Shown here: positions 160-64,000 of the stretch, one piece after another
Position numbering within the stretch: the first letter of the stretch is position 1
Layout: every line of letters starts with the position of its first letter
Assembly (NCBI RefSeq): GCF_006345805.1
Contig: NW_021834901.1
Span: 4,902 to 68,901, forward strand
Origin: Octopus sinensis
Lineage: Eukaryota
Direction: 5' to 3'
DNA length: 64,000 bases
The notes under the pieces: model-generated
What the model was told of the DNA's origin: nothing
Databases searched by the model: none
What the model saw: only the letters and a program-made list of their open reading frames with translations
Translations under genes and position numbers: made by a program

Positions 160-204
<45 letters not shown>

Positions 205-342: not shown

Positions 343-374
<32 letters not shown>

Positions 375-420
375 TGTGTGTGTGTATGTGTGTGTGTGAG
401 TATGTGTGTGTGTGTGTGTG
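1..420. repeat. Compound (TA)n/(TG)n/(GA)n microsatellites; similar tracts recur throughout the window
   Basis: Directly visible dinucleotide runs; they produce the YI/CV/HT-repeat ORFs of the ORF track. Confidence 0.95.
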
Positions 421-740
421 TTTCAATCTATGTATTGAAGTTTCTGTTTGTTTATCTGTCTAATTATTTTTCGAATTATCTCTCTCTCTCTCTTTCTCTC
501 TTTCTTTCTTTTTTCTTTCCCTCTCTCTCTGTTCCACACTTTCATTTTCTCTCTCTTTTTCTCTCTTTCTGACTTTCTCTCTTACTCTCCTCTCTCTCTC
601 TCTTCGTAATGCTATTTTTAGTGTGCTGGTGCTGCTTGTAGGAACTTTAATCATTAATTAATGATGCCTTACCTTATGGCATTTTTTTACGCATGCTTGC
701 CACTTGATATTATTATAAGCAATAATATCCTTATATATAC

Positions 741-789
<49 letters not shown>

Positions 790-2870
790 TATATGCACTT
801 ATACACAGGTGTGTATGATTGTGTATAGGAGAATATATTACTGAAAGAAATTCCAACTTTGATTTTTATGATTTATTTACAATCCTATAATAATATATGA
901 TAAGATAAGTTAACATAATGAAGCGATAGAATATCAAATATCCACTCTGATTGAACTAGTACTTTCATGCATTCTTCAAGTTGTATAAAAATAGGTATTG
1001 TCTGCATCATTCCAAAGAGAAATAAAGTCTCCATAAAGTGTAAAAGTTAGAAATAATTTGTATGGTGTTAGTAACAAAATATTGTGTTAGAAATAGGATT
1101 ATTATCATCGGTCTTAAATTTAATCTCGCCAGTGTAGATATGTGTGTGTATAAATATCAATTTTAAATATTTACAGGAAAGTAGCAAAAATTGATTTACA
1201 TTTACAATGCCGGTTTCAAATATGACTTCAGTTTTAATTTTTTACAGAAATTAAATAGGGTTTATCCACTTATCTGAATATTCTATTACCTCATGAAAGT
1301 TTATTGTCTCATTCTGCGGCTTGTATCGGATAAGAATTCTGACCGAAGTACACATTTGTTATGACCCGTTATGTGTTTTTTTAACGGCAGTGTCAGTACT
1401 TTGTGTCGATATATGTGATTCGCTGTACTTTAATATCCGGAAAATTAATCCATTTTCAAGAAATTCACCATTTCTACACGACGCAAATTAATATAAGATG
1501 AGGTGATTTGCTTAATAACTTAATACAATTCCCTTTACGGGAATTGAAACCGCGATCTCGCTATCGCGAATGTAACACCGTTAAGAGCATGGTCATTTGC
1601 CTTGGACACCAATTATATTATTTAACATGTTATATGACATAGGTGTAACAGCATCCCAGAAATCCTTCTTATCTACTAGGCGTTTTCCTGAAGCAACACC
1701 CACTGAATTTTCATGGAACCCCAAAATGATCTGAGCGTTACTCCTAAGAGATGTCTCTTGTCAGCTAACGATATGGCGTTGTATCATGTAATGATGGAAT
1801 TTCTGACGCAGAAAATTGCAGAGTTTGACGTGGTGATACAAAGTCTGAGACCGAGGCCAATTTTAGGTTCATATCTTTGTTTGATTTTTTTTTGTTGTGT
1901 TTTACTTAGGGTGTTGTTGTCGACGTTGTTGTTTGCCCTGTTCGTAATTTTGCACAAAGGCATTCCAACTATAACCAACTAAATTTCTTTTATTCCAACA
2001 TTAGCAACCATGTCCTCCATTGTGTAAAATAAGAGTGTGTGATTGGAAACAGATTTCGCAGCTATTTCCAGATGTTTGACGGAAAACATTATATATTTCT
2101 TTACTACCCACAAGGGGCTAAACAGAGAGGAGACAAACAAGACAGACAAACGGATTAAGTCGATTACATCGACCCCAGTGCGTAACTGGTACTTAATTTA
2201 TCGACCCCGGAAGGATGAAAGGCAAAGTCGACCTCGGCGGAATTTGAACTCGGAACGTAACGGCAGACGAAATACGGCAACGCATTTCGCCCGGCGTGCT
2301 AACGTTTCTGCCAGCTCGCCGCCTTAAACGGAAAACATTATAAACATATCTGCGTCACAAGCCAATGTTTCCTGATTGAGTAAAGCTATGATCAGAGGAC
2401 ATCCAGTCATCATCTTCCCATCCATTTAGTTATATAGCATTGTCTCCGGTCTCTAGGTGAGCAGGGCCGTCCTTGAATTCAATTGCTTAAGTACACCTGC
2501 AACCAAAAACTCATAGGACACTTGTGTGTATACTACTAAATACATGCTTGTTTAACTCCTCCTCAGATCTGAATACTTCGTCACCTTTTCATCCCCGCAG
2601 GACTTTCGAATGAAAGAATAAGTTGTATAGTCCAAAAAAGTATAGAGCTTAAATTAAAAAGATAATATTAAACAAGAATTCAAGCAAAATAGTCGGCAAT
2701 GCCTGTACACAGTGTCTGTACATAAATTTACAAATTGCTTTGCAGTGTTTCCGTTGTCTATTCGCGTTCTGAGTTCCTTTCCTGTCGAACTCCCTTTTGC
2801 CTTTCATTTCTCAGAGGTGCTAAAATCCAATTAGTTGACTGTCCCCTTCTCCCACAGAAACACAACCCTC
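95..2870 (+). repeat. Segmental duplication core, copy 1
   Basis: Collinear with 22124-24660 (both start ATAAGCATAGTAGAAAT) and, from ~470, with 11165-13240. Confidence 0.9.
2094..2327 (-). mobile_element. tRNA-derived SINE (family C) with 15-bp target-site duplication
   Basis: ACGGAAAACATTATA at 2079-2093 and 2328-2342. Minus-strand head has A-box/B-box-like GAGCTGGCAGAAACGTTAGC and GAGTTCAAATTCC. Paralogous sites near 12715 and 24125 are empty. Confidence 0.9.
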
Positions 2871-3192
2871 CCCCCAACATAACTGGACAACAGGTTCATT
2901 GAAGCGTTAATTGGCTGTGGCTGCAAATGAAATTAAAATGAATTTAAATTGCCTTACCATTCCGCCAATTCGACGCCAGCCAACTGACCATTCCAAATAC
3001 GATAAACAAGTGCATAACACACACATACATGTATACATACATACATACATGCATGCATACACAGGCGTATACACACATGTATGCATACACACACACATAC
3101 ATACGTATATATATATGACGAACTAATTCTTATTTTCTCAGAGGCAGCTCAGATTTTTGTCAATGAAAAGCGACTATATCTCCGTAATATAT

Positions 3193-4075
3193 GACTCTCT
3201 TTTTGTCTCTCTCTCTCTCTCTCTTTTTATTTTACTTGATCTGTCCCCCTCTCTCTCTCTCTCTTCTCTCTACTCATCCTCTTTTTCTCTTCTCTTTACC
3301 CTCCTATTTCTTTGTCTCGCTCTGCACTCACAGGTCATTCATTCTTCGACAAACCCATCCCTTCTCCTCTCTGATCCCTTCTTTCTCTCTCTTCTCTCTC
3401 TTTTGTGCGTTTTGTCCCTCGTCTCTCTCTCTCTTCCTTTGCTTCTCTTTCTTTTCTTTTCCCCTCTTCTCTGTCACGTGACTGTTGGCCGAAATCTGCC
3501 TCTCAGCTCCTGACCCTCGTCGTGTTAACATCGTTGTTTTTCGTCCGCCGCTATAAAGGCTTCTTCCAATGCGCCAGAGAAAAAATTTGTTTGCTTGTTA
3601 TCAGTCGTAAGACACTTGTTGTTTTCACCGTTAATGCTTCTGTATTTCATGTTTCTGTATTCCATTATTGTTTTTTGTTTTTTTTATATCTGTCCCTTTT
3701 GCTGTCCTGGTGTTCGTATGCATTCGATCCTTCTTCCAGGAAATCTACGCTTCCAGCTTAGTTTTTCTAATGCTCGTTGCTTAGTTTTTCTTGGAGGGCT
3801 GGCCGTGATCTAGTAATCTCAAGATTAATCAGCCGAAATTACTACGATGATCCGGTTCTTGACTGAAGACTGAGGGGTTCGAATGTCCTGTCCATGTTTA
3901 TTGTGTCGTCTTCTAAGAGTTATACGTTCTTGTCCATGTTGTATTTTTCTACATACCTTAACATATATTCCAGGCGCCCCGTACCCCCCTTATCATTAAT
4001 GTGAGCACATATTCTTAATAATTGGTACGACTCTCTTTTTGTCTCTCTCTCTCTCTCATTTTTACTTGATCTGTC

Positions 4076-4113
<38 letters not shown>

Positions 4114-4915
4114 ACTCATCCTCTTTTTCTCTTCTCTTTACCCTCCTATTTCTTTGTCTCGCTCTGCACTCACAGGTCATTCTTCGACACCCATCCCTTC
4201 TCCTCTCTGATCCCTTCTTTCTCTCTCTTCTCTCTCTTTGTTGCGTTTTGTCCCTCGTCTCTCTCTCTCTCTTCCTTTGCTTCTCTTTCTTTTCTTTTCC
4301 CTCTTCTCTGTCACGTGACTGTTGGCCGAAATCTGCCTCTCAGCTCCTGACCCTCGTCGTTTAACATCGTTGTTTTTCGTCCGCCGCTATAAAGGCTTCT
4401 TCCAATGCGCCAGAGAAAAAATTTGTTTGCTTGTTATCAGTCGTAAGACACTGTTGTTGTTTCATCCACCGTTAATGCTTCTGTATTTCATGTTTCTGTA
4501 TTCCATTATTGTTTTTTGTTTTTTTTATTCTGTCCCTTTGCTGCCTGGTGTTCGTATGCATTCGATCTCTTCTTCCAGGAAATCTACGCTTCCAGCTTAG
4601 TTTTTCTAATGCTCGTTGCTTAGTTTTTCTTGGAGGGCTGGCCGTGATCTAGTAATCTCAAGATTAATCAGCCGAAATTACTACGATGATCCGGTTCTTG
4701 ACTGAAGACTGAGGGGTTCGAATGTCCTGTCCATGTTTATTGTGTCGTCTTCTAAGAGTTATACGTTCTTGTCCATGTTGTATTTTTCTACATACCTTAA
4801 CATATATTCCAGGCGCCCCGTACCCCCCTTATCATTAATGTGAGCACATATTCTTAATAATTGGTACGACTCTCTTTTTGTCTCTCTCTCTCTCATCATT
4901 TACTTGTGATCTGTC

Positions 4916-4953
<38 letters not shown>

Positions 4954-5631
4954 CATCCTCTTTTTCTCTTCTCTTTACCCTCCTATTTCTTTGTCTCGCT
5001 CTGCACTCACAGGTCATTCTTCGACACCCATCCCTTCTCCTCTCTGATCCCTTCTTCTCTCTCTTCTCTCTCTTTGTTGCGTTTTGTCCCTCGTCTCTCT
5101 CTCTCTTCCTTTGCTTCTCTTTCTTTTCTCTTTTCCCTCTTCTCGTCACGTGCCTGTTGGCCGAAATCTGCCTCTCAGCTCCTGACCCTCGTCGTGTTAA
5201 CATCGTCGTTTTTTCGTCCGCCGCTATAAAGGCTTCTTCCAATGCGCCAGAGAAAAAATTTTTTGCTTGTTATCAGTCGTAAGACACTTGTTGTTTTCAC
5301 CGTTAATGCTTCTGTATTTCATGTTTCTGTATTCCATTATTGTTTTTTGTTTTTTTATATCTGTCCCTTTTGCTGTCCTGGTGTTCGTATGCATTCGATC
5401 CTTCTTCCAGGAAATCTACGCTTCCAGCTTAGTTTTTCTAATGCTCGTTGCTTAGTTTTTCTTGGAGGGCTGGCCGTGATCTAGTAATCTCAAGATTAAT
5501 CAGCCGAAATTACTACGATGATCCGGTTCTTGACTGAAGACTGAGGGGTTCGAATGTCCTGTCCATGTTTATTGTGTCGTCTTCTAAGAGTTATACGTTC
5601 TTGTCCATGTTGTATTTTTCTACATACCTTA
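3193..5631. repeat. ~835-840-bp tandem repeat, about 2.9 copies (CT-rich half plus complex half)
   Basis: GACTCTCT(T)TTTGTCTCTC restarts at ~3193, ~4028 and ~4868; the third copy is truncated at a (TA)n run. Confidence 0.93.
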
Positions 5632-5820
5632 ATATATATATATATATATATATATATCTTTGATAATGATGAAGAAGAGAGAGAGAGAGAGATAGAGAGA
5701 GAGAGAGATAGAGAGAGAGACAGACAGATAGAGAGAGAGAGAGATAGAGAGATACGCAAATATATATATATATAAATGTATATATATATATTTGTGTGTG
5801 TGTGTATGTGCGCGTATATA

Positions 5821-5926: not shown

Positions 5927-5977
<51 letters not shown>

Positions 5978-6020
5978 CGTGTGTGTGCGTGTGTGTGTGC
6001 GTGTGTGTGTGTGTGTGTGT

Positions 6021-7931
6021 GTAGTGTTGGCGAATCTCAGGAAGCATGGAAGTTTTGAAGGATGCAGTGCTCCGACAAGTAACAACTGATGCCGGCAGTT
6101 TGTTCCATGCTTGTATGTGTATGGAGGGGAGAAAATCAAGTGTAGTGTTGGCGAATCTCAGAAAGCATGGAAGTTTTGAAGGATGCAGTGCTCCGACAAC
6201 TAACAGCTGATGCCGGCAGTTTGTTCCATGCTTGTATGTGTATGGAGGGGAGAAAATCAAGTGTAGTGTTGGCGAATCTCAGGAAGCATGGAAGTTTTGA
6301 AGGATGCAGTGCTCCGACAACTAACAACTGATGCCGGCAGTTTGTTCCATGCATCAGCGTGTGTATGGAGGGGAGAAGATCAGGTGTAGTGTTGACGAAT
6401 CTCAGGAAGCATGGAAGTTTTGAAGGATGCAGTGCTCCGACAACTAACAACTGATGCCGGCAGTTTGTTCCGTGCTTGCGTGTGTATGGAGGGGAGAAAA
6501 TCAGGTGTAGTGTTGGCGAATCTCAGAAAGCATGAAAGTTTTGAAGGATGCAGTGCTCCGACAACTAACAACTGATGCCGGCAGTTTGTTCCGTGCTTGC
6601 GTGTGTATGAGGGGAGAAAATCAGGTGTAGTGTTGCCGAATCTCAGGAAGCATGGAAGTTTTTTTGAAGGATGCAGTGCCGACAAGTAACAACTGATGCC
6701 GGCAGTTTGTTCCATGCCTGCGTGTGTATGGAGGGGAGAAAATCAGGTGTAGTGTTGCCGAATCTCAGGAAGCATGGACGTTTTGAAGGATGCAGTGCTC
6801 CGAAAAGTAACAACTGATGCCGGCAGTTTGTTCCATGCTTGCGTGTGTATGGAGGGGAGGATATCAGGTGTAGTGTTGGCGAATCTCAGAAAGCATGGAA
6901 GTTTTGAAGGATGCAGTGCTCCGACAACTAACAACTGATGCCGGCAGTTTGTTCCATGCTTGCGTGTGTATGGAGGGGAGAAGATCAGGTGTAGTGTTGC
7001 CGAATCTCAGGAAGCATGGACGTTTTGAAGGATGCAGTGCTCCGACAACTAACAACTGATGCCGGCAGTTTGTTCCATGCTTGCGTGTGTATGGAGGGGA
7101 GAAAATCAGGTGTAGTGTTGGCGAATCTCAGGAAGCATGGAAGTTTTGAAGGATGCAGTGCTCCGACAACTAACAACTGATGCCGGCAGTTTGTTCCATG
7201 CATCAGCGTGTGTATGGAGGGGAGAAGATCAGGTGTAGTGTTGACGAATCTCAGGAAGCATGGAAGTTTTGAAGGATGCAGTGCTCCGACAACTAACAAC
7301 TGATGCCGGCAGTTTGTTCCGTGCTTGCGTGTGTATGGAGGGGAGAAAATCAGGTGTAGTGTTGGCGAATCTCAGAAAGCATGAAAGTTTTGAAGGATGC
7401 AGTGCTCCGACAACTAACAACTGATGCCGGCAGTTTGTTCCGTGCTTGCGTGTGTATGGAGGGGAGAAAATCAGGTGTAGTGTTGGCGAATCTCAGAAAG
7501 CATGGAAGTTTTGAAGGATGCAGTGCTCCGACAACTAACAGCTGATGCCGGCAGTTTGTTCCATGCTTGTATGTGTATGGAGGGGAGAAAATCAAGTGTA
7601 GTGTTGGCGAATCTCAGGAAGCATGGAAGTTTTGAAGGATGCAGTGCTCAGACAATTAACAACTGATGCCGGCAGTTTGTTCCATGCTTGCGTGTGTATG
7701 GAGGGGAGAAAATCAGGTGTAGTGTTGGCGAATCTCAGGAAGCATGGACGTTTTGAAGGATGCAGTGCTCCGACAACTAACAACTGATGCCGGCAGTTTG
7801 TTCCATGCTTGCGTGTGTATGGAGGGGAGGATATCAGGTGTAGTGTTGGCGAATCTCAGAAAGCATGGAAGTTTTGAAGGATGCAGTGCCCCAACAACTA
7901 ATAACTGATGCCGGCAGTTTGTTCCATGCTT
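6021..7931. repeat. 121-bp satellite array 1, ~16 copies, derived from a LINE 3' end
   Basis: GTAGTGTTGG recurs at 6021, 6142 and onward. Minus strand reads WNKLPASVVSCRSTASFKTSMLPEIRQHYT*, the WN.LP..VV...S...FK C-terminal motif of CR1/L2-group ORF2. Confidence 0.95.
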
Positions 7932-8050
7932 CAGCAAGTCTCAGCGTGAAAAATTATATCGGAAATGAATAAGAGAAAATTAACTTGGTGGATTATTACA
8001 CATACATAGTACAACAGGTCACATATCGACAAAAGGAAACTTGAAATTTC
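7925..8050 (-). pseudogene. LINE ORF2 remnant continuous with array 1
   Basis: Minus strand across the array edge reads FFTLRLAEAWNKLP, typical of CR1/L2 ORF2 ends; the frame is broken immediately upstream. The right boundary is approximate. Confidence 0.7.
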
Positions 8051-8120: not shown

Positions 8121-8974
8121 CTCAATAGTTTTTCTTTCCACATTAAATTCCAATATAATCGCAATTTACACACACTGTAACGTATTTGCAGAAAATTACA
8201 TTAGAAAATAACCCATTTTTGTTAAAGTTCTGAGCAAACACAGACAATTCGTGTGAATTTTACGAAACTCATCTTTCCGCCCACAGACAAATTTGTTTCG
8301 CTACAAATTCCGATATAATCAGAATGATCACCATCTGAAGCGTATTAACAGAAAATTTAATTAAATATGGCCGTTTGGCGGGGAGTTATGAGGAAACAAA
8401 TTCGGTGCGTCGCACACATCTGTGAGAATGGCTGCCTTCCGAAGACGGGTCTTCTGCTGGAAATCGCTGTTCCAGTCGGAAAGCTTCTCGGATGTCCTCT
8501 CCCGCATCTGTGCGTGTTGGTGGGACATTACCATCAAATCCAAGCACCATTTGAGTCGTCTCTTTTCCTAACTAACATCTCTCTCTCTCACTCTCTCTCT
8601 TTCTCTAATTCTTTTTTCTTTCTTTCTCTCTGGGGGTTATGTTGCAGCCCTACCCAACCACCAGAATCATCCTCACCTGACCTAAGACCGACAATGACAG
8701 AGAAAGTAGCTGTCCATCTGCAGCTGACATGTACCCCAAGCCTCGACTCCTTGAAGCATCAACGGCTTAAAATGTGTAAGAAGCCGGTTCCCATTGTTAA
8801 CAGCGTGTAGGTCAACGGCAGACATATCTGGTCGGTGGTGGAAGATTGAGACAGATGCACAGGTATCTCGACGAAATTCAGCTGCGGGGAAGTGGCATCT
8901 GTCTTTACGATCAACCATGTGTTTCATTTTTCTTGAATCTTTTATTTAAATAAGAAATTTCAGTGTTTTTTCCC

Positions 8975-10520: not shown

Positions 10521-13462
10521 CATCGTCGTTACTTTCTGCAGTTTTATTCCTCGATAGATTTGGCCATTTTTCTATAGAGAATATATTTTGTCTTTAATTA
10601 CAATATGCTAATTACTGTCACCGTCTTTGAGCAGAACAAGATGAAGATCTCACTCAATAAAGGAACTGATTCTGAGTCATCACATTTGAAAGTTATCCTT
10701 TTGGTTTCAGAGAGTCAGTGATAGAGTTCTCTTTTCTCTGTTATTTCAAAACGTCGTTTTTATAAATAAGTCTATTGTTACAAATTAAATTTAAATTTGA
10801 ATATGTTCCTCTTAGTTTACATAATCAGTGACTTATTGTTTTGTACAACTTTCAGGAAGAAAGATCATGTTTATTATATTTTTGTTGTGTTTTTACATCA
10901 CATATAATATTTGAATATTCGTTCATTCCACGTTTTTGGAGCTAAAAATTAGTAAGATATGTCAGCAATTTATTCAAAATTATTTTATATAAAGGATGAT
11001 ACCATATAATTTGTTTCTAAACCAATAATTTCTAATAGTAATTGCTTATCAATTTCTGAAATAAATTTGAAGTAATTTAAATAATTTTATGTTAAATTTC
11101 AAAATAATCAGGTCTGTTCACTCGTATCACGTAAGAATCCAATAACAATTGGACAATACTTACTTATTTTTCGAATTATCTCTCTCTCTCTCTTTCTCTC
11201 TTTCTTTCTTTTTTCTTTCCCTCTCTCCCTGTTCCACACTTTCTTTTCTCTCTCTTTTTCTCTCCTTCTGTCTTTCTGTTCTTCTCTCTCTCTTTGTGCT
11301 GCTATTTTTAGTGTGCTGGTGCTGCTTGTAGGACCTTTAATTATTAATTAATGATGCTTTACCTTATGGGATTTTTTACGCATGCTTGCCAGTTGATATT
11401 ATTGTAAGCAATAATATCCATATATATATATATATAAATATATATGCACTTATACACAGGTGTGTATGATTGTGTATAGAAGAATATTCCAACTTTGATT
11501 TTCATGATTTATTTACAATCTTATAATAATATATGATAAGATAAGATAACATAATGAAGCGATAGAATATCAAATATCCACTCTGATTGAACTAGTACTT
11601 TCATGCATTCTTCAAGTTGTATAAAAATAGTTATTGTCTGCATCATTCCAAAGAGAAATAAAGTCTCCATAAAGTGTAAAACATAGAAATAATTTGTAAG
11701 GTGTTAGTAACAAAATATTTTGTTAGAAATAGGACTATTATCATCGGTCTTAAATTTAATTTCGCCTGTGTAGATATGTGTGTGTATAAATATTAATTTT
11801 AAATCTTTACAGGAAAGTAGCAAAAATTGATTTACATTTACAATGCCGGTTTCAAATATGACTTCAGTTTTAATTTTTTACAGAAATTAGAAAAGGTTTA
11901 TCCACTTATCTGAATATTCTATTACCTCATGAAAGTTTATTGTCTCATTTTGCGGCTTGTATCGGATAAGAATACTGACCGAAGTACACATTTTTTATAA
12001 CCCGTTATGTGTTTTTTTAACGGCAGTGTCAGTATTTTCTGTCGATGTATGTTATTCGCTGTACTTTAATATCCGGAAAATAAATCCATTTTCCAGAAAT
12101 TCACCATTCCTACACGACGCAAAGCAATATGAGATGAGGTGTTTTGCTTAAGAACGCAATACAATTCCCTTTACGGGATTCGAAACCGCGATCTCGCTAT
12201 CGCGAATGTAGCACAGTTAACATCGTGGTCATACGCCTTGGACACCAGTTATATTATTAAACATGTTATATGACATAGAGGTGACAGCATCCCAGAAATC
12301 CTTCTTATTTACTGGGCGTTTTCCCGAAGCAACACCCACTGAATTTTCATGGATCCCGAGAAAGATCTGAGCGTTACTCCTAAGAGATGTCTCTTGTCAG
12401 CTAACGATATGGCGTTGTATCATGTAATGATAGAAAGTCTGACGCAGAAAATTGCGTTGTTTGATGTGGTGATACAAAGTCTGAGAACGAGGCCAATTTT
12501 AGGTACATATCTTTGTTTGATTTTTGTGTGTTTTACTTAGGGTGTTGTTGTCGACGTTGTTGTTTGCCCTGACTGATCGTAATTTTGCACAAAGGCATTC
12601 CAATTATACCCTACTAATTATTTTTATTCAAACATTAGCAACCATTTCCTCCATTGTCTAAAATAAGAGTGTGTGATTGGAAAGAGATTTCGCAGGTATC
12701 TCCAGGTGTTTGATGGAAAACATTGTAAACATATCTGCGCCACAAGCCAATGTTTCCTGATTGAGTAAGCTATGGTCAGAGGACATCCAGTCGTCATCTT
12801 CCCATCCATTTAGTTATATAGCATTGTCTCCGGTCTCTAGGTGAGCAGGGTTTTCCCTGAATTCAATTGCAACCAAAAACCCATAGGACACTTGTGGGTA
12901 TACCACTAAATACATGCTTCCAATTCCTCAGATCTGAATGCTTCGCCACCTTCCCATCCCCGCAGGACTTTCAAATGAAAAAAATAAGTTGTACAGTTAA
13001 AAAGTATAGAGGTTAAATTAAAAAGATAATATTAAACAAGAATATCCAAGCAAAATAGTCGGCAATGTCTGTACACAATGCCTGTACACAAATTTACAAA
13101 TTGCTTTGCAGCGTTTCTGTCGGCTATTCGCGTTCTGAGTTCCTTTCCCGCTGAAGTCCCCTTTGCGTTTCATTTCTCAGAGGTGCTGAAGTCCAATTAG
13201 TCGACTGACCACTTCCCCCACAATAACACAACCACTGGCATTCTACCTAAGCCAGAGACAACATTATATGAGCGGCAATCTAGGATTTCAGGACAAAGAA
13301 TTGCTACGCGGTGTCATATGTAATCATGTATGGTTATATAAAGATGCAGAAAGACATATACATACACAAACACACACAAATATATTTGCGTGTATGTGTG
13401 TGTGTGTAAGTGTACCTGTGTGTGCTTGTGTATGTGACTGTGTGCAATTATGTACGTTTGTT

Positions 13463-13510
<48 letters not shown>

Positions 13511-14584
13511 CGTAGAGCCCTGTGAGTGGATTTGGTAGACAGAAACTATATGTATATATATGTGTGTGTGTGTCTATATGTTTCTATGTGTCATTTTATT
13601 GTTCACTTTTGCCGATCCGCTATGTTAAGGGGAGCGAAATAAAACCATGCTGCCAAGCTGTGAATGGAGAATAAACATAGACACACATACGTTTGAATGT
13701 GTTATTTTATTGCTCACTTTTGCCGATCCGCGATGTTAAGGGTGATGTTATGGTTGCTTGGAACCAAATGCTCACCGCCAAATTATCGTCAGAAATTAAA
13801 TACGTTTTATCCACTTATCTGAATATTCTATTGCCTCATATAAGTTTTTTGTCTCATCAGAAGCGTTCCGGTCGTGATCATCCCGTCGCTTTACTTATAT
13901 TGCAATGTGTGTTGTGTTCTTTCCGTGGTTAAGACGATAGGGTGTGAGACAATGGAATATCATAGTCTCAAATGCTTACGATAGGGCTGATAGCGCAAAT
14001 GTTCAAGTAATGGGCATTCATTAGTCCTGAAACCTATATCTACAATCATTATTGTAATACATCACATGATGTGGATGTTAATTTTCATAGATCTTTCCGA
14101 AATATAAGTCCGACCTTTCTATCAAGATGAAGCATCAATTTATTAAACGACATCTAGGACTGAATTATTCTGCAACTTGCAGAAGAATGAAAGTGATATT
14201 CTACGTGGTTTACTCTGCATGTGTGTTTAGTATATTGTAACTTTCATGTACATGGGTTATCTCAAGTACAACATACCCTCGAATATTTAGGGGCGTCCAG
14301 TTCACCCTGTGTAACTTGCCGAAGACTCACACAGCAGATGCAGGTACTAGAGGGTAAAGACGGTACTAATTCTCTAAGTTGTTCACTTGAGCATCCGCAT
14401 ACCAATTTATTATTATTCCATATACACAAAACACTTTAGATTGTCTGAATACGTTTGTGTGTATATATATATATACTAATGTATATGTGGGCGTCTATGA
14501 GCATGTGTGTGTGTGAATACATGCACAAGTGTACGGCGTTCAAAATACACACACAGACACACACACACGCAGATACACACACAC

Positions 14585-54779: not shown

Positions 54780-54921
54780 ATTACAATTATAAAATAATAA
54801 TAAAAATAATGAAATTATTGTATACAGTGCTCAGGTGCACCACCACTTGTCAGAAAGTGGGTATAAAGTGTATGCAGTAATGTACAAATGTATGGAAAGC
54901 GAACAGTGTATGAGTCAGATA
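54780..54921 (-). mobile_element. 3' UTR and (ATT)-rich tail of the LINE that seeded the 121-bp satellite
   Basis: Minus strand continues from the unit (...ACGCAAGCATG) into unique sequence with a GTGC-ACCTGA-GCAC stem-loop and an ATTATT-rich tail. Confidence 0.65.
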
Positions 54922-57900
54922 CATGCTTGCGTATGTATGGAGGGGAGGACATCAGGTGTAGTGTTGGCGAATCTCAGAAAGCATTGAAGTTTTGAAGGAT
55001 GCAGTGCTCCGACAACTAACAACTGATGCCGGCAGTTTGTTCCATGCTTGTGTGTGTATGGAGGGGAGGAAATCAGGTGTAGTGTTGGTGAATCTCAGGA
55101 AGCATGGAAGTTTTGCAGGATGCAGTGCTCCGACAACTAACAACTGATGCCGGCAGTTTGTTCCATGCTTGCGTGTGTATGGAGGGGAGAAAATCAGGTG
55201 TAGTGTTGGCGAATCTCAGAAAGCATGGAAGTTTTGAAGGATGCAGTGCTCAGAAAATTAACAACTGATGGCGGCAGTTTGTTCCATGCTTGCGTGTGTA
55301 TGGAGGGGAGGAAATCAGGTGTAGTGTTGGCGAATCTCAGAAAGCATGGAAGTTTTGAAGGATGCAGTGCTCAGACAATTAACAACTGATGCCGGCAGTT
55401 TGTTCCATGCTTGCGTGTGTATGGAGGGGGGGAAATCAGGTGTAGTGTTGGCGAATCTCAGAAAGCATGGAAGTTTTGAAGGATGCAGTGCTCCGACAAC
55501 TAACAACTGATGCCGGCAGTTCGTTCCATGCTTGTGTGTGTATGGAGGGGAGGAAATCAGGTGTAGTGTTAGCGAATCTCAGGAAGGATGGAAGTTTTGA
55601 AGGATGCAGTGCTCCGACAACTAACGACTGATGCCGGCAGTTGTTCCATGCTTGTGTGTGTATGGAGGGGAGGAAATCAGGTGTAGTGTTGGCGAATCTC
55701 AGGAAGCATGGAAGTTTTGAAGGATGCAGTGCTCAAACAATTAACAACTGATGCCGGCAGTTTGTTCCATGCTTGCGTGTGTATGGAGGGGAGGAAATCA
55801 GGTGTAGTGTTGGTGAATCTCAGGAAGAATGGAAGTTTTGAAGGATGCAGTGCTCAGAAAATTAACAACTGATGCCGGCAGTTTGTTCCATGCTTGAGTG
55901 TGTATGGAGGGGAGGAAATCAGGTGTAGTGTTGGTGAATCTCAGGAAGAATGGAAGTTTTGAAGGATGCAGTGCTCAGACAACTAACAACTGATGCCGGC
56001 AGTTTGTTCCATGCTTGAGTGTGTATGGAGGGGAGGAAATCAGGTGTAGTGTTGGTGAATCTCAGGAAGAATGGAAGTTTTGAAGGATGCAGTGCTCAGA
56101 CAACTAACAACTGATGCCGGCAGTTTGTTCCATGCTTGCGTGTGTATGGAGGGGAGGAAATCAGGTGTAGTGTTGGTGAATCTCAGGAAGAATGGAAGTT
56201 TTGAAGGATGCAGTGCTCAGACAATTAACAACTGATGCCGGCAGTTTGTTCCATGCTTGCATGTGTATGGAGGGGAGGAAATCAGGTGTAGTGTTGGTGA
56301 ATCTCAGGAAGGATGGAAGTTTTGAAGGATGCAGTGCTCAGACAATTAACAACTGATGCCGGCAGTTTGTTCCATGCTTGAGTGTGTATGGAGGGGAGGA
56401 AATCAGGTGTAGTGTTGGTGAATCTCAGGAAGGATGGAAGTTTTGAAGGAGGCAGTGCTCAGACAATTAACAACTGATGCCGGCAGATTGTTCCATGCTT
56501 GCGTGTGTATGGAGGGGAGGAAATCAGGTGTAGTGTTGGTGAATCTCAGGAAGAATGGAAGTTTTGAAGGATGCAGTGCTCAGACATTAACAACTGATGC
56601 CGCAGTTTGTTTCCATGCTTGAGTGTGTATGGAGGGGAGGAAATCAGGTGTAGTGTTGGTGAATCTCAGGAAGGATGGAATTTTGAAGGATGCAGTGCTG
56701 CAACCACTAAACTGATGCCGGCAGTTTGTTCCATGCTTGAGTGTGTATGGAGGGGAGGAAATCAGGTGTAGTGTTGGTGAATCTCAGGAAGAATGGAAGT
56801 TTTGAAGATGCAGTGCTCAGAAAATTAACAACTGATGCCGGCAGTTTGTTCCATGCTTGTGTGTATGGGGAGGGGAGGAAATCATGTAGTGTTGGTGAAT
56901 CTCAGGAAGGATGGAAGTTTTGAAGGATGCAGTGCTGCAACCTCTAACAACTGATGCCGGCAGTTTGTTCCATGCTTGAGTGTGTATGGAGGGGAGGAAA
57001 TCAGTGTAGTGTTGGTGAATCTCAGGAAGGATGGAAGTTTTGAAGGATGCAGTGCTGCACACTAACACTGATGCCGGCAGTTGTTCCCTGCTTGAGTGTG
57101 TATGGAGGGGAGGAAATCAGGTGTAGTGTTGGTGAATCTCAGGAAGGATGGAAGTTGTGAAGGATGCAGTGCTCAGACAATTAACAACTGATGCCGGCAG
57201 TTTGTTCCATGCTTGCGTGTGTATGGAGGGGAGGAAATCAGGTGTAGTGTTGGTGAATCTCAGGAAGAATGGAAGTTTTGAAGGATGCAGTGCTCAGACA
57301 ATTAACAACTGATGCCGGCAGTTTGTTCCATGCTTGCGTGTGTATGGAGGGGAGGAAATCAGGTGTAGTGTTGGTGAATCTCAGGAAGAATGGAAGTGTT
57401 GAAGGATGCAGTGCTCAGACAATTAACAACTGATGCCGGCAGTTTGTTCCATGTTTGCGTGTGTATGGAGGGGAGGAAATCAGGTGTAGTGTTGGTGAAT
57501 CTCAGGAAGAATGGAAGTTTTGAAGGATGCAGTGCTCAGAAAATTAACAACTGATGCCGGCAGTTTGTTCCATGCTTGAGTGTGTATGGAGGGGAGGAAA
57601 TCAGGTGTAGTGTTGGGGAATCTCAGGAAGAATGGAAGTTTTGAAGGATGCAGTGCTCAGACAATTAACAACTGATGCCGGCAGTTTGTTCCATGCTTGA
57701 GTGTGTATGGAGGGGAGGAAATCAGGTGTAGTGTTGGTGAATCTCAGGAAGGATGGAAGTTTTGAAGGATGCAGTGCTGCAACCACTAACAACTGATGCC
57801 GGCAGTTTGTTCCATGCTTGCGTGTGTATGGAGGGGAGGAAATCAGGTGTAGTGTTGGTGAATCTCAGGAAGGATGGAAGTTTTGAAGGATGCAGTGCTG

Positions 57901-60900
57901 CAACCACTAACAACTGATGCCGGCAGTTTGTTCCATGCTTGAGTGTGTATGGAGGGGAGGAAATCAGGTGTAGTTTTGGTGAATCTCAGGAAGGATGGAA
58001 GTTTTGAAGGATGCAGTGCTCAGACAATTAACAACTGATGCCGGCAGTTTGTTCCATGCTTGCGTGTGTATGGAGTGGAGGAAATCAGGTGTAGTGTTGG
58101 TGAATCTCAGGAAGAATGGAAGTTTTGAAGGATGCAGTGCTCAGACAATTAACAACTGATGCCGGCAGTTTGTTCCATGCTTGCGTGTGTATGGAGGGGA
58201 GGAAATCAGGTGTAGTGTTGGTGAATCTCAGGAAGAATGGAAGTGTTGAAGGATGCAGTGCTCAGACGATTAACAACTGATGCCGGCAGTTTGTTCCATG
58301 TTTGCGTGTGTATGGAGGGGAGGAAATCAGGTGTAGTGTTGGTGAATCTCAGGAAGAATGGAAGTTTTGAAGGATGCAGTGCTCAGACAATTAACAACTG
58401 ATGCCGGCAGTTTGTTCCATGCTTGCGTGTGTATGGAGGGGAGGAAATCAGGTGTAGTGTTGGTGAATCTCAGGAAGAATGGAAGTTTTGAAGGATGCAG
58501 TGCTCAGACAATTAACAACTGATGCCGGCAGTTTGTTCATGCTTTGTGTGTATGGAGGGGAGGAAATCAGGTGTAGTGTTGGTGAATCTCAGGAAGGATG
58601 GAAGTTTTGAAGGATGCAGTGCTTGCAAACCACTAACAACTGATGCCGGCAGTTTGTTCCATGCTTGAGTGTGTATGGAGGGGAGGAAATCAGGTGTAGT
58701 GTTGGTGAATCTCAGGAAGAATGGAAGTTTTGAAGGATGCAGTGCTGCAACCACTAACAACTGATGCCGGCAGTTTGTTCCAAGCTTGAGTGTGTATGGA
58801 GGGGAGGAAATCAGGTGTAGTGTTGGTGAATCTCAGGAAGATGGAAGTTTTGAAGGATGCAGTACTCAGACAATTAACAACTGATGCCGGCAGTTTGTTC
58901 CATGCTTGCGTGTGTATGGAGGGGAGGAAATCAGGTGTAGTTTTGGGAATCTCAGAAGGATGGAAGTTTTGAAGGATGCAGTGCTGCAGACCACTAACAA
59001 CTGATGCCGGCAGTTTGTTCCATGCTTGAGTGTGTGGAGGGGAGGAAATCAGGTGTAGTGTTGGTGAATCTCAGGAAGAATGGAAGTTTTGAAGGATGCA
59101 GTGCTCAGAAAATTAACAACTGATGCGGCAGTTTGTTCTGCTTGAGTGTGTATGGAGGGGAGGAAATCAGGTGTAGTGTTGGTGAATCTCAGAAGGATGG
59201 AAGTTTTGAAGGATGCAGTGCTGCAACTCTACAACTGATGCCGGCAGTTTGTTCCATCCATGCTTGAGTGTGTATGGAGGGGAGAAATCAGGTGTAGTGT
59301 TTGTTGAATCTCAGGAAGGATGGAAGTTTTGAAGGATGCAGGGCTGGCAACAACTAACAACTGATGCCGGCAGTTTGTTCCATGCTTGAGTGTGTATGGA
59401 GGGGAGGAAATCAGGTGTAGTTTTGGTGAATCTCAGGAAGGATGGAAGTTTTGAAATATGCAGTGCTCAGACAATTAACAACTGATGCCGGCAGTTTGTT
59501 CCATGCTTGCGTGTGTATGGAGGGGAGGAAATCAGGTGTAGTGTTGGTGAATCTCAGGAAGAATGGAAGTTTTGAAGGATGCAGTGCTCAGACAATTAAC
59601 AACTGATGCCGGCAGTTTGTTCCATGCTTGCGTGTGTATGGAGGGGAGGAAATCAGGTGTAGTGTTGGTGAATCTCAGGAAGAATGGAAGTGTTGAAGGA
59701 ATGCAGTGCTCAGACAATTAACAACTGATGCCGGCAGTTTGTTCCATGTTTGCGTGTGTAGGAGGGGAGGAAATCAGGTGTAGTGTTGGTGAATCTCAGG
59801 AAGAATGGAAGTTTTGAAGAAGGATGCAGTGCTCAGAAAATAACAAACTGACTGATGCCGGCAGTTTGTTCCAAGCTTGAGTGTGTATGGAGGGGAGGAA
59901 ATCAGGTGTAGTGTTGGGGAATCTCAGGAAGAATGGAAGTTTTGAAGAGATGCAGTGCTCAGACAATAACACAACTGATGCCGGCAGTTTGTTCCATGCT
60001 TGAGTGTGTATGGAGGGGAGGAAATCAGGTGTAGTGTTGGTGAATCTCAGGAAGGATGGAAGTTTTGAAGGATGCAGTGCTGCAACCACTAACAACTGAT
60101 GCCGGCAGTAGTTTGTTCCATGCTTGAGTGTGTATGGAGGGAGGAGGAATCAGGTTGTAGTGTTGGTGAATCTCAGGAAGGATGGAAGTTTTGAAGGATG
60201 CAGTGCTGCAACCACTAACAACTGATGCCGGCAGTTGTTCCATGCTTGAGTGTGATGGAGGGGAGGAAATCAGGGGTAGTTTTGGTGAATCTCAGGAAGG
60301 ATGGAAGTTTTGAGGATGCAGTGCTCAGACAATTAACAACTGATGCCGGCAGTTTGTTCCATGCTTGCGTGTGTATGGAGTGGAGGAAATCAGGTGTAGT
60401 GTTGGTGAATCTCAGGAAGAATGGAAGTTTTGAAGGATGCAGTGCTCAGACAATTAACAACTGATGCCGGCAGTTGTTCCATGCTTGCGTGTGTGTATGG
60501 AGGGGAGGAAATCAGGTGTAGTTTTGGTGAATCTCAGGAAGAATGGAAGTTGAAGGATGCAGTGCTCAGACGATTAAAACTGATGCCGGCAGTTTGTTCC
60601 ATGCTTGCGTGTGTATGGAGGGGAGGAAATCAGGTGTAGTGTTGGTGAATCTCAGGAAGAATGGAAGTTTTGAAGGATGCAGTGCTCAGACAATTAACAA
60701 CTGATGCCGGCAGTTTGTTCCATGCTTGCGTGTGTATGGAGGGGAGGAAATCAGGTGTAGTGTTGGTGAATCTCAGGAAGAATGGAAGTTTTGAAGGATG
60801 CAGTGCTCAGACAATTAACAACTGATGCCGGCAGTTTGTTCCATGCTTGTGTGTGTATGGAGGGGAGGAAATCAGGTGTAGTGTTGGTGAATCTCAGGAA

Positions 60901-63900
60901 GAATGGAAGTTTTGAAGGATGCAGTGCTGCAACCACTAACAACTGATGCCGGCAGTTTGTTCCATGCTTGCGTGTGTATGGAGGGGAGGAAATCAGGTGT
61001 AGTGTTGGTGAATCTCAGGAAGAATGGAAGTTTTGAAGGATGCAGTGCTCAGACAATTAACAACTGATGCCGGCAGTTTGTTCCATGCTTGAGTGTGTAT
61101 GGAGGGGAGGAAATCAGGTGTAGCGTTGGTGAATCTCAGGAAGGATGGAAGTTTTGAAGGATGCAGTGCTGCAACCACTAACAACTGATGCCGGCAGTTT
61201 GTTCCATGCTTGTGTGTGTATGGAGGGGAGGAAATCAGGTGTAGTGTTGGTGAATCTCAGGAAGGATGGAAGTTTTGAAGGATGCAGTGCTGCAACCACT
61301 AACAACTGATGCCGGCAGTTTGTTCCATGCTTGAGTGTGTATGGAGGGGAGGAAATCAGGTGTAGTGTTGGTGAATCTCAGGAAGAATGGAAGTTTTGAA
61401 GGATGCAGTGCTGCAACCACTAACAACTGATGCCGGCAGTTTGTTCCAAGCTTGAGTGTGTATGGAGGGGAGGAAATCAGGTGTAGTGTTGGTGAATCTC
61501 AGGAAGGATGGAAGTTTTGAAGGATGCAGTACTCAGACAATTAACAACTGATGCCGGCAGTTTGTTCCATGCTTGCGTGTGTATGGAGGGGAGGAAATCA
61601 GGTGTAGTGTTGGTGAATCTCAGGAAGGATGGAAGTTTTGAAGGATGCAGTGCTCAGACAATTAACAACTGATGCCGGCTGTTTGTTCCATGCTTGCGTG
61701 TGTATGGAGGGGAGGAAATCAGGTGTAGTGTTTGTGAATCTCAGGAAGAATGGAAGTTTTGAAGGATGCAGTGCTCAGACAATTAACAACTGATGCCGGC
61801 AGTTTGTTCCATGCTTGAGTGTGTATGGAGGGGAGGAAATCAGGTGTAGCGTTGTCAATCTCAGGAAGGATGGAAGTTTTGAAGGATGCAGTGCTGCAAC
61901 CACTAACAACTGATGCCGGCAGTTTGTTCCATGCTTGTGTGTGTATGGAGGGGAGGAAATCAGGTGTAGTGTTGGTGAATCTCAGGAAGGATGGAAGTTT
62001 TGAAGGATGCAGTGCTGCAACCACTAACAACTGATGCCGGCAGTTTGTTCCATGCTTGAGTGTGTATGGAGGGGAGGAAATCAGGTGTAGTGTTGGTGAA
62101 TCTCAGGAAGAATGGAAGTTTTGAAGGATGCAGTGCTGCAACCACTAACAACTGATGCTGGCAGTTTGTTCCAAGCTTGCGTGTGTATGGAGGGGAGGAA
62201 ATCAGGTGTAGTGTTGGTGAGTCTCAGGAAGAATGGAAGTTTTGAAGGATGCAGTGCTGCAACCACTAACAACTGATGCCGGCAGTTTGTTCCATGCTTG
62301 CGTGTGTATGGAGGGGAGGAAATCAGGTGTAGTGTTGGTGAATCTCAGGAAGGATGGAAGTTTTGAAGGATGCAGTGCTCAGACAATTAACAACTGATGC
62401 CGGCAGTTTGTTCCATGCTTGCGTGTGTATGGAGGGGAGGAGATCAGGTGTAGTGTTGTTGAATCTCAGGAAGGATGGAAGTTTTGAAGGATGCAGTGCT
62501 GCAACCACTAACAACTGATGCCGGCAGTTTGTTCCATGCCTGAGTGTGTATGGAGGGGAGGAAATCAGGTGTAGTGTTGGTGAATCTCAGGAAGAATGGA
62601 AGTTTTGAAGGATGCAGTGCTCAGACAATTAACAACTGATGCCGGCAGTTTGTTCCATGCTTGTGTGTGTTTGGAGGGGAGGAAATCAGGTGTAGTGTTG
62701 GTGAATCTCAGCAAGGATGGAAGTTTTGAAGGATGCAGTGCTGCAACCACTAACAACTGATGCCGGCAGTTTGTTCCATGCTTGTGTGTGTATGGAGGGG
62801 AGGAAATCAGGTGTAGTGTTGGTGAATCTCAGGAAGGATGGAAGTTTTGAAGGATGCAGTGCTCAGACAATTAACAACTGATGCCGGCAGTTTGTTCCAT
62901 GCTTGTGTGTGTATGGAGGGGAGGAAATCAGGTGTAGTGTTGGTGAATCTCAGGAAGGATGGAAGTTTTGAAGGATGCAGTGCTCAGACAATTAGCAACT
63001 GAGGACGGCAGTTTGTTCCATGCTTGCGTGTGTATGGAGGGGAGGAAATCAGGTGAAGTGTTGGTGAATCTCAGGAAGGATGCAAGTTTTGAAGGATGCA
63101 GTGCTCAGACAATTAACAACTGATGCCGGCAGTTTGTTCCATGCTTGCGTGTGTATGGAGGGGAGGAAATCAGGTGTAGTGTTGGTGAATCTCAGGAAGG
63201 ATGGAAGTTTTGAAGGATGCAGTGCTCAGACAATTAACAACTGATGCCGGCAGTTTGTTCCATGCTTGTGTGTGTATGGAGGGGAGGAAATCAGGTGTAG
63301 TGTTGGTGAATCTCAGGAAGAATGGAAGTTTTGAAGGATGCAGTGCTCAGACAATTAACAACTGATGCCGGCAGTTTGTTCCATGCTTGCGTGTGTATGG
63401 AGGGGAGGAAATCAGGTGTAGTGTTGGTGAATCTCAGGAAGAATGGAAGTTTTGAAGGATGCAGTGCTCAGACAATTAACAACTGATGCCGGCAGTTTGT
63501 TCCATGCTTGCGTGTGTATGGAGGGGAGGAAATCAGGTGTAGTGTTGGTGAATCTCAGGAAGGATGGAAGTTTTGAAGGATGCAGTGCTGCAACCACTAA
63601 CAACTGATGCCGGCAGTTTGTTCCATGCTTGAGTGTGTATGGAGGGGAGGAAATCAGGTGTAGTGTTGGTGAATCTCAGGAAGGATGGAAGTTTTGAAGG
63701 ATGCAGTGCTCAGATAATTAACAACTGATGCCGGCAGTTTGTTCCATGCTTGAGTGTGTAAGGAGGGGAGGAAATCAGGTGTAGTGTTGGTGAATCTCAG
63801 GAAGAATGGAAGTTTTGAAGGATGCATTGCTCAGACAATTAACAACTGATGCCGGCAGTTTGTTCCATGCTTGTGTGTGTATGGAGGGGAGGAAATCAGG

Positions 63901-64000
63901 TGTAGTGTTGGTGAATCTCAGGAAGAATGGAAGTTTTGAAGGATGCAGTGCTCAGACAATTAACAACTGATGCCGGCAGTTTGTTCCATGCTTGCGTGTG
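54922..64000. repeat. 121-bp satellite array 2, ~75 copies, runs off the window
   Basis: Same unit and orientation as 6021-7931; begins at CATGCTT (54922). Confidence 0.97.

What the first reader, a model, noticed from the sequence alone, without database searches (positions are those of the whole stretch)
6021..8050. 121-bp satellite born from the last codons and UTR of a LINE via a 7-bp microhomology (ORF-side junction)
Seen: the unit encodes WNKLPASVV...FK...* and the array's right edge continues into FFTLRLAEAWNKLP. The unit boundary is AAGCATG, present both in the E-A-W codons (plus CATGCTT at 7925-7931) and 121 bp later in the 3' UTR (plus 54922). Established: this motif ends ORF2 of CR1/L2-group LINEs. 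Inference: slippage or recombination between the two AAGCATG copies seeded the tandem array, so the origin of the satellite can be read directly from the sequence.
Basis: partly seen in the sequence, partly recalled or inferred. Interest (0 to 1): 0.78.

Follow-up and report, generated by a model that had tools for sequence, protein, structure and literature searches.

The report
LINE-tail 121-bp satellite in octopus
A 121-bp tandem repeat in this octopus-like genome is an amplified copy of the last 31 codons, stop codon and first 23 UTR bases of a CR1-type jumping gene, cut out between two copies of AAGCATG; this is a clean but unsurprising example of how satellite DNA is born.

Summary

- **Arrays.** There are two same-sense 121-bp arrays: 6019-7931 (15.8 units) and 54922-64000+ (at least 75 units).
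- **Coding content.** On the minus strand each unit reads AWNKLPASVVSCRSTASFKTSMLPEIRQHYT*. Array 1's head continues 22 bp upstream into FFTLRLAE.
- **Relatives.** A search of 1.84 billion protein representatives found five relatives (E 9e-11 to 4e-7). A follow-up search placed them in Octopus vulgaris and O. sinensis CR1-like ORF2 tails. A bird protein fragment (Tinamus) carries the same motif.
- **Parent element.** A single-unit O. vulgaris copy (L001 6436-6950) has AAGCATG at 6693 and 6814, exactly 121 bp apart. Both window flanks align to this one element at about 92%. Array 2's flank runs to the LINE's natural 3' end.
- **No older duplication.** The unit and the UTR after it share nothing beyond the 7-mer.
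- **Third array.** O. vulgaris locus L005 has a 7-unit array behind 550 bp of ORF2.

Caveats:
- DNA slippage cannot be separated from reverse-transcriptase template jumping.
- A 123-bp junction variant exists.
- Array 1's far end is not at AAGCATG.
- Where the array was born, and how often, is unknown.

This is a new member of a known kind. A chicken CR1-derived HinfI satellite is already described.

The parts
6019..7931 (-). Array 1: 15.8 units of the 121-bp repeat (LINE sense is the minus strand). It contains a 7-unit (849-bp) higher-order block and two 123-bp units.
   Evidence: TRF. Unit table and junctions. Self-identity is 0.918 at offset 849 against 0.805 at offset 121.
7932..7953 (-). 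ORF-side flank: the LINE ORF2 codons FFTLRLA(E) directly 5' of the first unit. It matches the parental LINE at 21 of 22 bases. LINE homology starts here, so this copy is 5'-truncated.
   Evidence: A TAA stop at 7954-7956 and unrelated sequence lie upstream.
7925..7931 (-). ORF-site AAGCATG (codons gaA-GCA-TGg, Glu-Ala-Trp). This is the 5' boundary of the first unit.
   Evidence: The same site is at L001 6693-6699.
7834..7836 (-). The ORF2 stop codon (TGA), carried inside every unit. Each unit is 2 nt of the Glu codon, 31 codons, the stop, and 23 nt of 3' UTR.
5934..6027 (.). (TG)n/(AC)n microsatellite with GCGT interruptions that replaces the 3' part of array 1's last unit. No UTR-side AAGCATG junction survives at this array.
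54922..64000 (-). Array 2: at least 75 units, running off the window. Interior units are a homogenised derived variant. The five units nearest 54922 are closer to the parental and array-1 type.
54922..54928 (-). UTR-site AAGCATG: the last 7 bases of array 2, followed by unique LINE 3' UTR (TATCTGACTC...).
   Evidence: The same site is at L001 6814-6820.
54795..54921 (-). The rest of the LINE 3' UTR downstream of the unit, reaching the element's natural end (..CAATAATTTCATTAT plus an ATT-rich tail). The end coordinate is approximate.
   Evidence: Aligns to O. vulgaris L001 copy B, O. sinensis L004 and ENA loci L006/L008. All diverge after TTCATTAT(ATT)n.

Best explanation
**What it is.** The repeat is a piece of a CR1-group LINE turned into a satellite. 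The parental element ends ...KHFFTLRVAE-AWNKLPASVVSCRSTASFKTSMLPEIRQHYT*, followed by about 150 nt of 3' UTR and an ATT-rich tail.

**How it started.** Two copies of AAGCATG lie 121 bp apart in that element. One is in the Glu-Ala-Trp codons and the other is 23 nt past the stop codon. A microhomology-mediated tandem duplication joined the UTR copy to the ORF copy inside a LINE insertion. The likely mechanisms are replication slippage, template switching, or microhomology end-joining with the sister chromatid. The result was a dimer whose junction keeps one AAGCATG.

**How it grew.** Once two 121-bp copies existed, ordinary unequal exchange expanded and homogenised the array. Part of that growth was in 7-unit blocks.

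**What it does.** The arrays are non-coding. The frame shifts by +1 per unit, each unit carries the stop codon, and no cellular function is implied.

**Shown:** derivation from the LINE, the unit boundaries, the two sites in a single-copy parent, and the later array dynamics.

**Inferred:** that the 7-mer mediated the first duplication, and that this happened at the DNA level.
For: - Unit and flank structure are established.
- The peptide finds octopus CR1-like ORF2 C-termini at E 9e-11 to 4e-7. Profile hits include O. vulgaris and O. sinensis proteins and a bird fragment (Tinamus) with the same motif.
- The single-unit parent L001 copy B has AAGCATG at 6693 and 6814, spacing 121. The maximal shared string is GAAGCATG.
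- Both window flanks align to that one element at about 92%, through to its natural 3' end.
- The unit and the UTR after it share no similarity beyond the 7-mer (28 of 114 identities, shuffle mean 29.8). The sites are therefore isolated microhomology, not relics of an older repeat.
- More divergent subfamilies share less at the two sites and were seen only as single units. O. sinensis L004 has AAACATG and ACACATG. ENA loci L006 and L008 share only CATG.
- Units at the edge of array 2 are closer to the parent than interior units.
- Array 1 has an 849-bp higher-order period. Both this and the edge pattern are the pattern expected from in-place unequal exchange.
Against: - Only one single-unit copy carries both intact 7-mers. 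Copy A has AAGCGTG at the ORF site.
- A 515-bp LINE tail contains 15 repeated 7-mers, four of them extending to 8-mers. The pair is therefore not remarkable in itself. The argument rests on its coincidence with the array boundaries.
- The 123-bp junction ACACGCTG|AAGCATGG, whose extra TG matches the ORF flank, occurs in L005 and in window array 1. It needs a second event, either a GC-microhomology junction or a conversion from the array head.
- Arrays at three loci each keep LINE sequence on only one side within what could be read: array 1 keeps the ORF side and lacks the UTR side, L005 keeps the ORF side and is cut mid-unit, and array 2 keeps the UTR side while its ORF side lies beyond the window. 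No array was seen with both junctions.
- No dimer intermediate was found among the nine or so copies examined.
Confidence: 0.7

Rival explanations
1. The LINE's own reverse transcriptase made the repeats. During target-primed reverse transcription the enzyme reaches the ORF-site AAGCATG and jumps back to the UTR-site AAGCATG, on the same or another RNA. It re-copies the 121 nt, possibly several times. Multimeric insertions are then dispersed by retrotransposition and enlarged locally.
For: - Arrays occur at three or more separate loci, each attached to LINE sequence with different 5' truncation points. Array 1 has 22 bp of ORF and L005 has about 550 bp.
- Junctions are heterogeneous (121-bp and 123-bp types, the latter with only GC microhomology), as expected from independent jumps.
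- In L005 the array is joined mid-unit to a second, 5'-truncated CR1-like LINE that has its own (AACT)n tail. This is the architecture of a template-switch chimera, and there is a weak possible 7-bp duplication (TTACTAC) on both sides.
- The 123-bp junction type and the GCCGGCATC variant are shared between L005 and the window arrays.
Against: - Array 1 and L005 lack the LINE 3' end that every primed insertion should carry.
- No convincing target-site duplications were found.
- The edge-versus-interior gradient and the 7-unit block duplication show that most copies arose in place.
- An array of 75 or more units (over 9 kb) is far longer than jumps would give.
- Only about nine copies were examined.
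Confidence: 0.2
2. A 121-bp circle was excised between the two AAGCATG sites, amplified by rolling-circle replication, and re-inserted as ready-made arrays.
For: - Microhomology-bounded excision would give exactly this unit.
- Array 1 and the L005 array end mid-unit against unrelated sequence on one side.
Against: - Array 1 and L005 continue in register into ORF2 on the 5' side, and array 2 continues in register into the UTR and natural LINE end on the 3' side. A re-inserted concatemer would not do this.
- No array was seen at a site free of LINE sequence.
Confidence: 0.05
3. The direction is reversed: a pre-existing satellite monomer was captured as the 3' end of the LINE.
For: None beyond the shared sequence.
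Against: - The unit encodes the conserved C-terminal ORF2 motif (FF..R....WN.LP..VV....S..FK) shared with bird, amphioxus and echinoderm proteins.
- The motif is split by the unit boundary and thrown out of frame in the array.
- Divergent octopus subfamilies have the same region as a single copy.
Confidence: 0.01

Closest known systems
Chicken HinfI (SCR1) tandem repeat derived from CR1, as listed in review PMC9659126, Table 1
   Same: It is a satellite or tandem repeat whose monomer contains the 3' UTR and part of ORF2 of a CR1-family LINE.
   Different: - It is in a vertebrate and has a different unit.
- From the review text I could not tell whether a microhomology-bounded progenitor was shown there.
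- Here the single-copy parent with both breakpoint repeats was recovered and the unit is short (121 bp).
Cetacean common satellite and other L1-derived satellites (PROsat, Pvc20), listed in PMC9659126
   Same: In each case a LINE 3' end or ORF2 fragment was amplified into a tandem array.
   Different: They come from the L1 clade, not CR1. Their junction-level origin is generally not preserved, whereas here head and tail junctions are still readable.
PisTR-A and other satellites from the 3' UTR tandem repeats of Ogre LTR retrotransposons (PMC7004042; PMC9659126)
   Same: Short tandem repeats inside the 3' untranslated part of a retroelement act as the seed for long satellite arrays.
   Different: Those are plant LTR elements in which the repeats are a standing variable region of the element. 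Here, most sampled LINE copies carry one unit and the unit includes coding sequence.
Microhomology-mediated tandem duplication (replication slippage, template switching, microhomology end-joining), as reviewed in PMC9659126 section 4
   Same: A short direct repeat is present at both breakpoints in the progenitor, and one copy is retained at the novel junction.
   Different: This is a generic mutational mechanism, not a family. The window gives only its end product.

Membership tests
CR1-group (CR1/L2-like) non-LTR retrotransposon, as parent of the unit | Conserved ORF2 C-terminal motif FFxxRxxxxWNxLPxxVVxxxSxxxFK, close to the stop codon | tested here: met
   - The window peptide is FFTLRLAEAWNKLPASVISCWGTASFKTS.
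- The octopus relatives extend upstream into RPHLEFASPVWNP...VQRRATR.
- The bird fragment P0051 reads RKHFFTLRVVELWNKLPRKVVECPSSEIFKSCLD.
CR1-group (CR1/L2-like) non-LTR retrotransposon, as parent of the unit | Placement of the reverse-transcriptase domain within the CR1 clade | not tested
   No full-length copy was recovered. Only a YADD box was seen upstream in O. sinensis L004. Pfam gives no hit on the C-terminal fragments. CR1 versus L2 or Rex1 is not resolved.
CR1-group (CR1/L2-like) non-LTR retrotransposon, as parent of the unit | 3' end is a short simple repeat rather than a long poly(A) tail, with frequent 5' truncation | tested here: met
   Five copies end ..TTCATTAT followed by (ATT/TAT)n and then diverge. 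Copies start at different ORF2 positions.
Satellite DNA | Head-to-tail arrays of a monomer longer than 100 bp | tested here: met
   15.8 and at least 75 units of 121 bp.
Satellite DNA | Concerted evolution or higher-order structure within arrays | tested here: met
   Array-specific consensus variants and an edge-versus-interior gradient. An 849-bp higher-order period in array 1.
Satellite DNA | High genomic abundance and long arrays at many loci | not testable with these tools
   - Only three arrays were seen: two in the window and one of 7 units in O. vulgaris L005.
- No octopus genome can be searched by DNA here.
- Satellite ORFs are absent from the protein collections.
- The JGI metagenome scan gave 0 hits.
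Microhomology-mediated tandem duplication | The single-copy progenitor carries the same short sequence at both breakpoints, at the unit's spacing | tested here: met
   L001 copy B has AAGCATG at 6693 and 6814, spacing 121.
Microhomology-mediated tandem duplication | The novel junction keeps one copy of the microhomology with no untemplated bases | tested here: inconclusive
   This holds for the main 121-bp junction, ACACGC|AAGCATGG. The 123-bp variant has an extra TG that matches the ORF flank, so it needs a second event.

The most novel reading that the evidence does not exclude
The LINE's reverse transcriptase itself generates the multimers. It jumps repeatedly between the two AAGCATG sites during insertion, so the element seeds a ready-made satellite nucleus wherever it lands. 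The arrays at different loci, including the L005 chimera with a second LINE, would then be products of retrotransposition rather than of local DNA slippage.
Probability: 0.2. Interest if true: 0.65.

Novelty: new member of a known kind. Interest (0 to 1): 0.45.

Why it matters
Satellite DNA is abundant, but its moment of birth is rarely preserved. Four things can still be read here:
- the single-copy progenitor;
- the two 7-bp breakpoint repeats;
- the head and tail junctions;
- arrays of about 7, 16 and 75 or more units.

Octopus genomes could therefore serve as a natural series for studying how a retrotransposon tail becomes a satellite. They could also help decide whether the first step is made by the replication machinery or by the element's own reverse transcriptase.

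For annotation, the practical point is that these arrays should be labelled as CR1-derived satellite, not as many LINE fragments.

Tried and rejected
**Searches that found nothing.**
- A word-index protein search with the 43-residue tail peptide found no candidates.
- Exact look-ups of six satellite ORFs and four other window ORFs found none in the collection. The species of the window could therefore not be fixed.
- A homology search with the plus-strand 54-residue satellite ORF found nothing. No further arrays could be reached through proteins.
- A JGI metagenome scan for GCATGGAACAAACTGCCNGCATC gave 0 hits.
- The 2026 O. vulgaris repeat-annotation paper lists 13 recently active CR1 families but does not mention any satellite.

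**Ideas tested and rejected.**
- *The unit and the UTR after it are an old diverged duplication, so AAGCATG would be a relic.* Rejected: 28 of 114 identities against a shuffle mean of 29.8, and no gapped alignment.
- *The unit forms a meaningful RNA structure.* The 10-bp inverted repeat AAGCATGGAA/TTCCATGCTT closes the predicted fold. However, the energy is ordinary (z = -0.58), and the derived units of array 2 have lost the pairing (CATTCTT).
- *The two arrays are halves of one array split by an insertion.* Rejected: the order along the LINE sense is array 2, then its 3' junction, then 47 kb, then the 5' junction, then array 1.

**Left unexplained.** The 270-bp inverted pair next to both arrays (8154-8422 and 54529-54791, 69% identity) is absent from the other loci.

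Full report
**1. What is in the window**

Tandem Repeats Finder reports a 121-bp array at 6019-7931 (15.8 copies, 94% matches). It reports a second array in the same orientation at 54922-64000 (75.1 copies), which runs off the window.

Read on the minus strand, array 1 has sixteen anchor points. They are spaced 121 bp apart, except for two 123-bp units.

From 7953 the minus strand translates as FFTLRLAEAWNKLPASVISCWGTASFKTSMLSEIRQHYT, followed by TGA at 7836-7834. The consensus unit reads AWNKLPASVVSCRSTASFKTSMLPEIRQHYT*.

A unit is therefore made of four parts:
- the last two bases of a Glu codon;
- 31 codons;
- the stop codon;
- 23 nt of untranslated sequence.

Because 121 is 3x40+1, the frame slips by one base at every unit.

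| Junction | Sequence | Position |
|---|---|---|
| Head of array 1 | ..TTGCTG\|AAGCATGG | plus-strand CATGCTT at 7925-7931 |
| Unit to unit | ..ACACGC\|AAGCATGG | throughout |
| End of array 2 | ..ACGCAAGCATG\|TATCTGACTC | 7-mer at 54922-54928 |

Two qualifications apply.
- The ORF-derived flank of array 1 is only 22 bp (7932-7953). A TAA stop precedes FF, and the sequence upstream is not LINE.
- Array 1's other end is not at AAGCATG. The last unit breaks off at CCAACACTACAC and runs into an (AC)n tract with CG interruptions.

The ORF-side and UTR-side junctions are therefore each seen once, on different arrays.

**2. Is the coding resemblance real?**

The 39-residue peptide was searched with HMMER against 1.84 billion representative proteins. 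It found five hits at E 9e-11 to 4e-7 and 69-86% identity.

These hits are short predicted proteins ending in ...KHFFTLR(V/I)AEAWNKLPASVV(S/G)CRSTASFK(T/A)SMLPV(I/V)RQHYT. Upstream they have the usual RPHLEFASPVWNP...VQRRATR...LPYSERL region of a LINE ORF2 C-terminus.

A profile search gave 133 proteins. Named ones include:
- Octopus vulgaris entries, one annotated 'RNA-directed DNA polymerase from mobile element jockey-like';
- an Octopus sinensis entry;
- amphioxus and brittle-star proteins;
- a bird (Tinamus) fragment reading RKHFFTLRVVELWNKLPRKVVECPSSEIFKSCLD.

The exact clade (CR1, L2 or Rex1) is not resolved. No full-length copy was recovered, and Pfam has no model for this tail.

The window is very probably from an Octopus species. 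The same SINE is also seen in the window (46355-46892) and in O. vulgaris locus L001. I could not fix the species.

**3.

O. vulgaris chromosome OX597841.1 (locus L001) carries two 5'-truncated LINE tails side by side. Copy B (6436-6950) has a single unit:

...CATTTTTTCACGCTGAGAGTTGCTG-AAGCATG-GAAC...ACACAG-AAGCATG-TATCTGACTCATACAC...CAATAATTTCATTAT...

- The two AAGCATG sites start at 6693 and 6814, exactly 121 bp apart. The longest shared string is GAAGCATG.
- Window 7953-7804 (head flank plus first unit) aligns to this copy at 92.7%.
- Window 55049-54787 (last unit plus flank) aligns at 91.6%.
- Five copies from three sources share the 3' end up to ..TTCATTAT and an ATT-rich tail, then diverge.

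Array 2's flank is therefore the rest of the LINE 3' UTR down to its natural terminus, near 54795-54800.

**4. How strong is the microhomology argument?**

A 515-bp LINE tail contains 15 repeated 7-mers, four of which extend to 8-mers. A 7-mer pair by itself is therefore unremarkable. What matters is that the array's two boundaries fall exactly on this pair. For arbitrary breakpoints, the chance of seven matching bases is about 4^-7.

I tested whether the pair is a relic of an older 121-bp duplication. It is not. Apart from the 7-mer, the unit and the following UTR match at 28 of 114 positions, against a shuffle mean of 29.8.

More divergent subfamilies share less at the two sites and were seen only with one unit:

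| Locus | ORF site | UTR site | Shared |
|---|---|---|---|
| O. sinensis L004 (8-bp insertion in the unit) | AAACATG | ACACATG | ACATG |
| ENA L006 and L008 | GGCATGG | TACATGT | CATG |

They are consistent with the longer match promoting the event, but the sample is about nine copies.

**5. After the birth**

- Array 1 has a 7-unit higher-order period. Self-identity is 0.918 at offset 849 against 0.805 at offset 121.
- In array 2, interior units are a homogenised derived type that differs from array 1's consensus at six positions. The five units next to the UTR junction are closer to the parent and to array 1.
- Both patterns are what unequal exchange inside an array produces.
- The arrays carry a stop codon in every unit and shift frame at every junction, so they do not encode protein.

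**6. What does not fit a single simple event**

- A third array exists in O. vulgaris (L005). About 550 bp of ORF2 (from 6113) runs through the same head junction into seven units (6665-7499).
- Its first two junctions are ACACGCTG|AAGCATGG (123 bp). The extra TG matches the ORF flank, so the join lies at a GC dinucleotide, not in the 7-mer.
- The same 123-bp type occurs twice in window array 1, as ACACGCTG|ATGCATGG.
- This needs either a second junction-forming event or a conversion from the array head.
- The L005 array ends mid-unit against a different, 5'-truncated CR1-like LINE with an (AACT)n tail.
- Among arrays whose far end could be read, only array 2 keeps the LINE 3' end.

These facts keep a rival alive. 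The LINE's reverse transcriptase may jump between the two sites during insertion, creating multimers that are then dispersed. I put this at about 0.2. The reasons against it:
- convincing target-site duplications were not found;
- two of the three arrays lack the 3' end that priming requires;
- most copies clearly arose in place.

Rolling-circle re-insertion (0.05) is disfavoured because the arrays continue in register into LINE sequence. Capture of a satellite by the LINE is excluded by the deep conservation of the encoded motif.

**7. Comparison with what is known**

Satellites derived from transposable elements are well documented. A review lists a chicken HinfI (SCR1) repeat built from the 3' UTR and part of ORF2 of CR1. 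It also lists L1-derived satellites in cetaceans, a hamster and a seal, and Ogre 3' UTR-derived satellites in legumes. It discusses microhomology-mediated joining and slippage as mechanisms (PMC9659126; PMC7004042).

A 2026 repeat annotation of O. vulgaris reports 13 recently active CR1 families and does not mention any satellite (PMC13282606).

This finding is therefore a new member of a known kind. Its merit is that progenitor, breakpoints and several array sizes are all still legible.

**8. Verdict**

- The step 'the 7-mer mediated a DNA-level slippage or recombination' is a well-founded inference (0.7), not a demonstration.
- Interest is moderate (0.45).

Noticed in passing
window 7922-7931 and 7861-7870 (minus strand), repeated in every unit: Each unit holds a perfect 10-bp inverted repeat, AAGCATGGAA ... 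TTCCATGCTT. The breakpoint 7-mer therefore occurs a third time, inverted, about 60 nt downstream. The repeat closes the predicted fold, but the folding energy is ordinary (z = -0.58). The derived units of array 2 have lost it (CATTCTT).
   Followed up: partly
window 8154-8422 (+) and 54529-54791 (-); 12-mer at 7953-7964 (-): A roughly 270-bp sequence (69% identity) lies next to both arrays in inverted orientation. In each case its same end faces the LINE-derived sequence. Its 12-mer TTCCGATATAAT also abuts the 5' truncation point of array 1's LINE fragment (4 matches against 0.5 expected). It is absent from the other loci fetched.
   Followed up: partly
window 3190-5639: An unrelated tandem repeat with a period of about 835-840 bp (about three copies, 95-99.6% identity) lies just left of array 1.
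   Followed up: no
window 1-2867, 11411-21756, 22032-30233: Large segmental repeats with a period of about 11.4 kb (87-94% identity). The first copy breaks off near 2867, where the 835-bp repeat and array 1 follow.
   Followed up: no
window 31322-35031 (-): A different non-LTR retrotransposon: ORFs of 176, 91, 542 and 326 residues, with RVT_1 (E 1.7e-30) and a weak zf-RVT hit. It is not the parent of the satellite, because its tail is different.
   Followed up: partly
window 46355-46892; L001 7440-7590: A SINE-like sequence (..CTTCTTTCAGTTTCCGTCTACCAAATCCACTCACAAGGC..) is present as a 177-bp tandem of 3.1 copies in the window and as a single copy in O. vulgaris. This would be another repeat family forming short tandems.
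   Followed up: no
L001 6140-6950 (O. vulgaris OX597841.1): Two 5'-truncated tails of the same LINE lie head to tail. Copy A stops 8 nt after its UTR-site AAGCATG (TATCTGAC), and copy B's ORF2 sequence starts at once. Copy A also has an 8-bp deletion and AAGCGTG at the ORF site.
   Followed up: partly
L005 7496-7880 (O. vulgaris CATOCA020000001.1): The 7-unit array is joined mid-unit to a second, different CR1-like LINE tail (..SFSVRVADPWNKLPDEMV..) with an (AACT)n end. TTACTAC occurs on both sides of the composite, a weak candidate for a target-site duplication.
   Followed up: partly
L006 95-167 (ENA ERZ27277065): A fragment of the unit in reverse orientation lies directly upstream of a single-unit LINE tail. 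The predicted protein P0003 therefore starts in antisense unit sequence and then reads through the LINE stop codon into the UTR.
   Followed up: no
protein P0029: A 134-residue 'hypothetical protein, partial [Escherichia coli]' on a 406-bp contig matches this animal LINE tail at 46% identity. It is most likely animal DNA contaminating a bacterial assembly.
   Followed up: no
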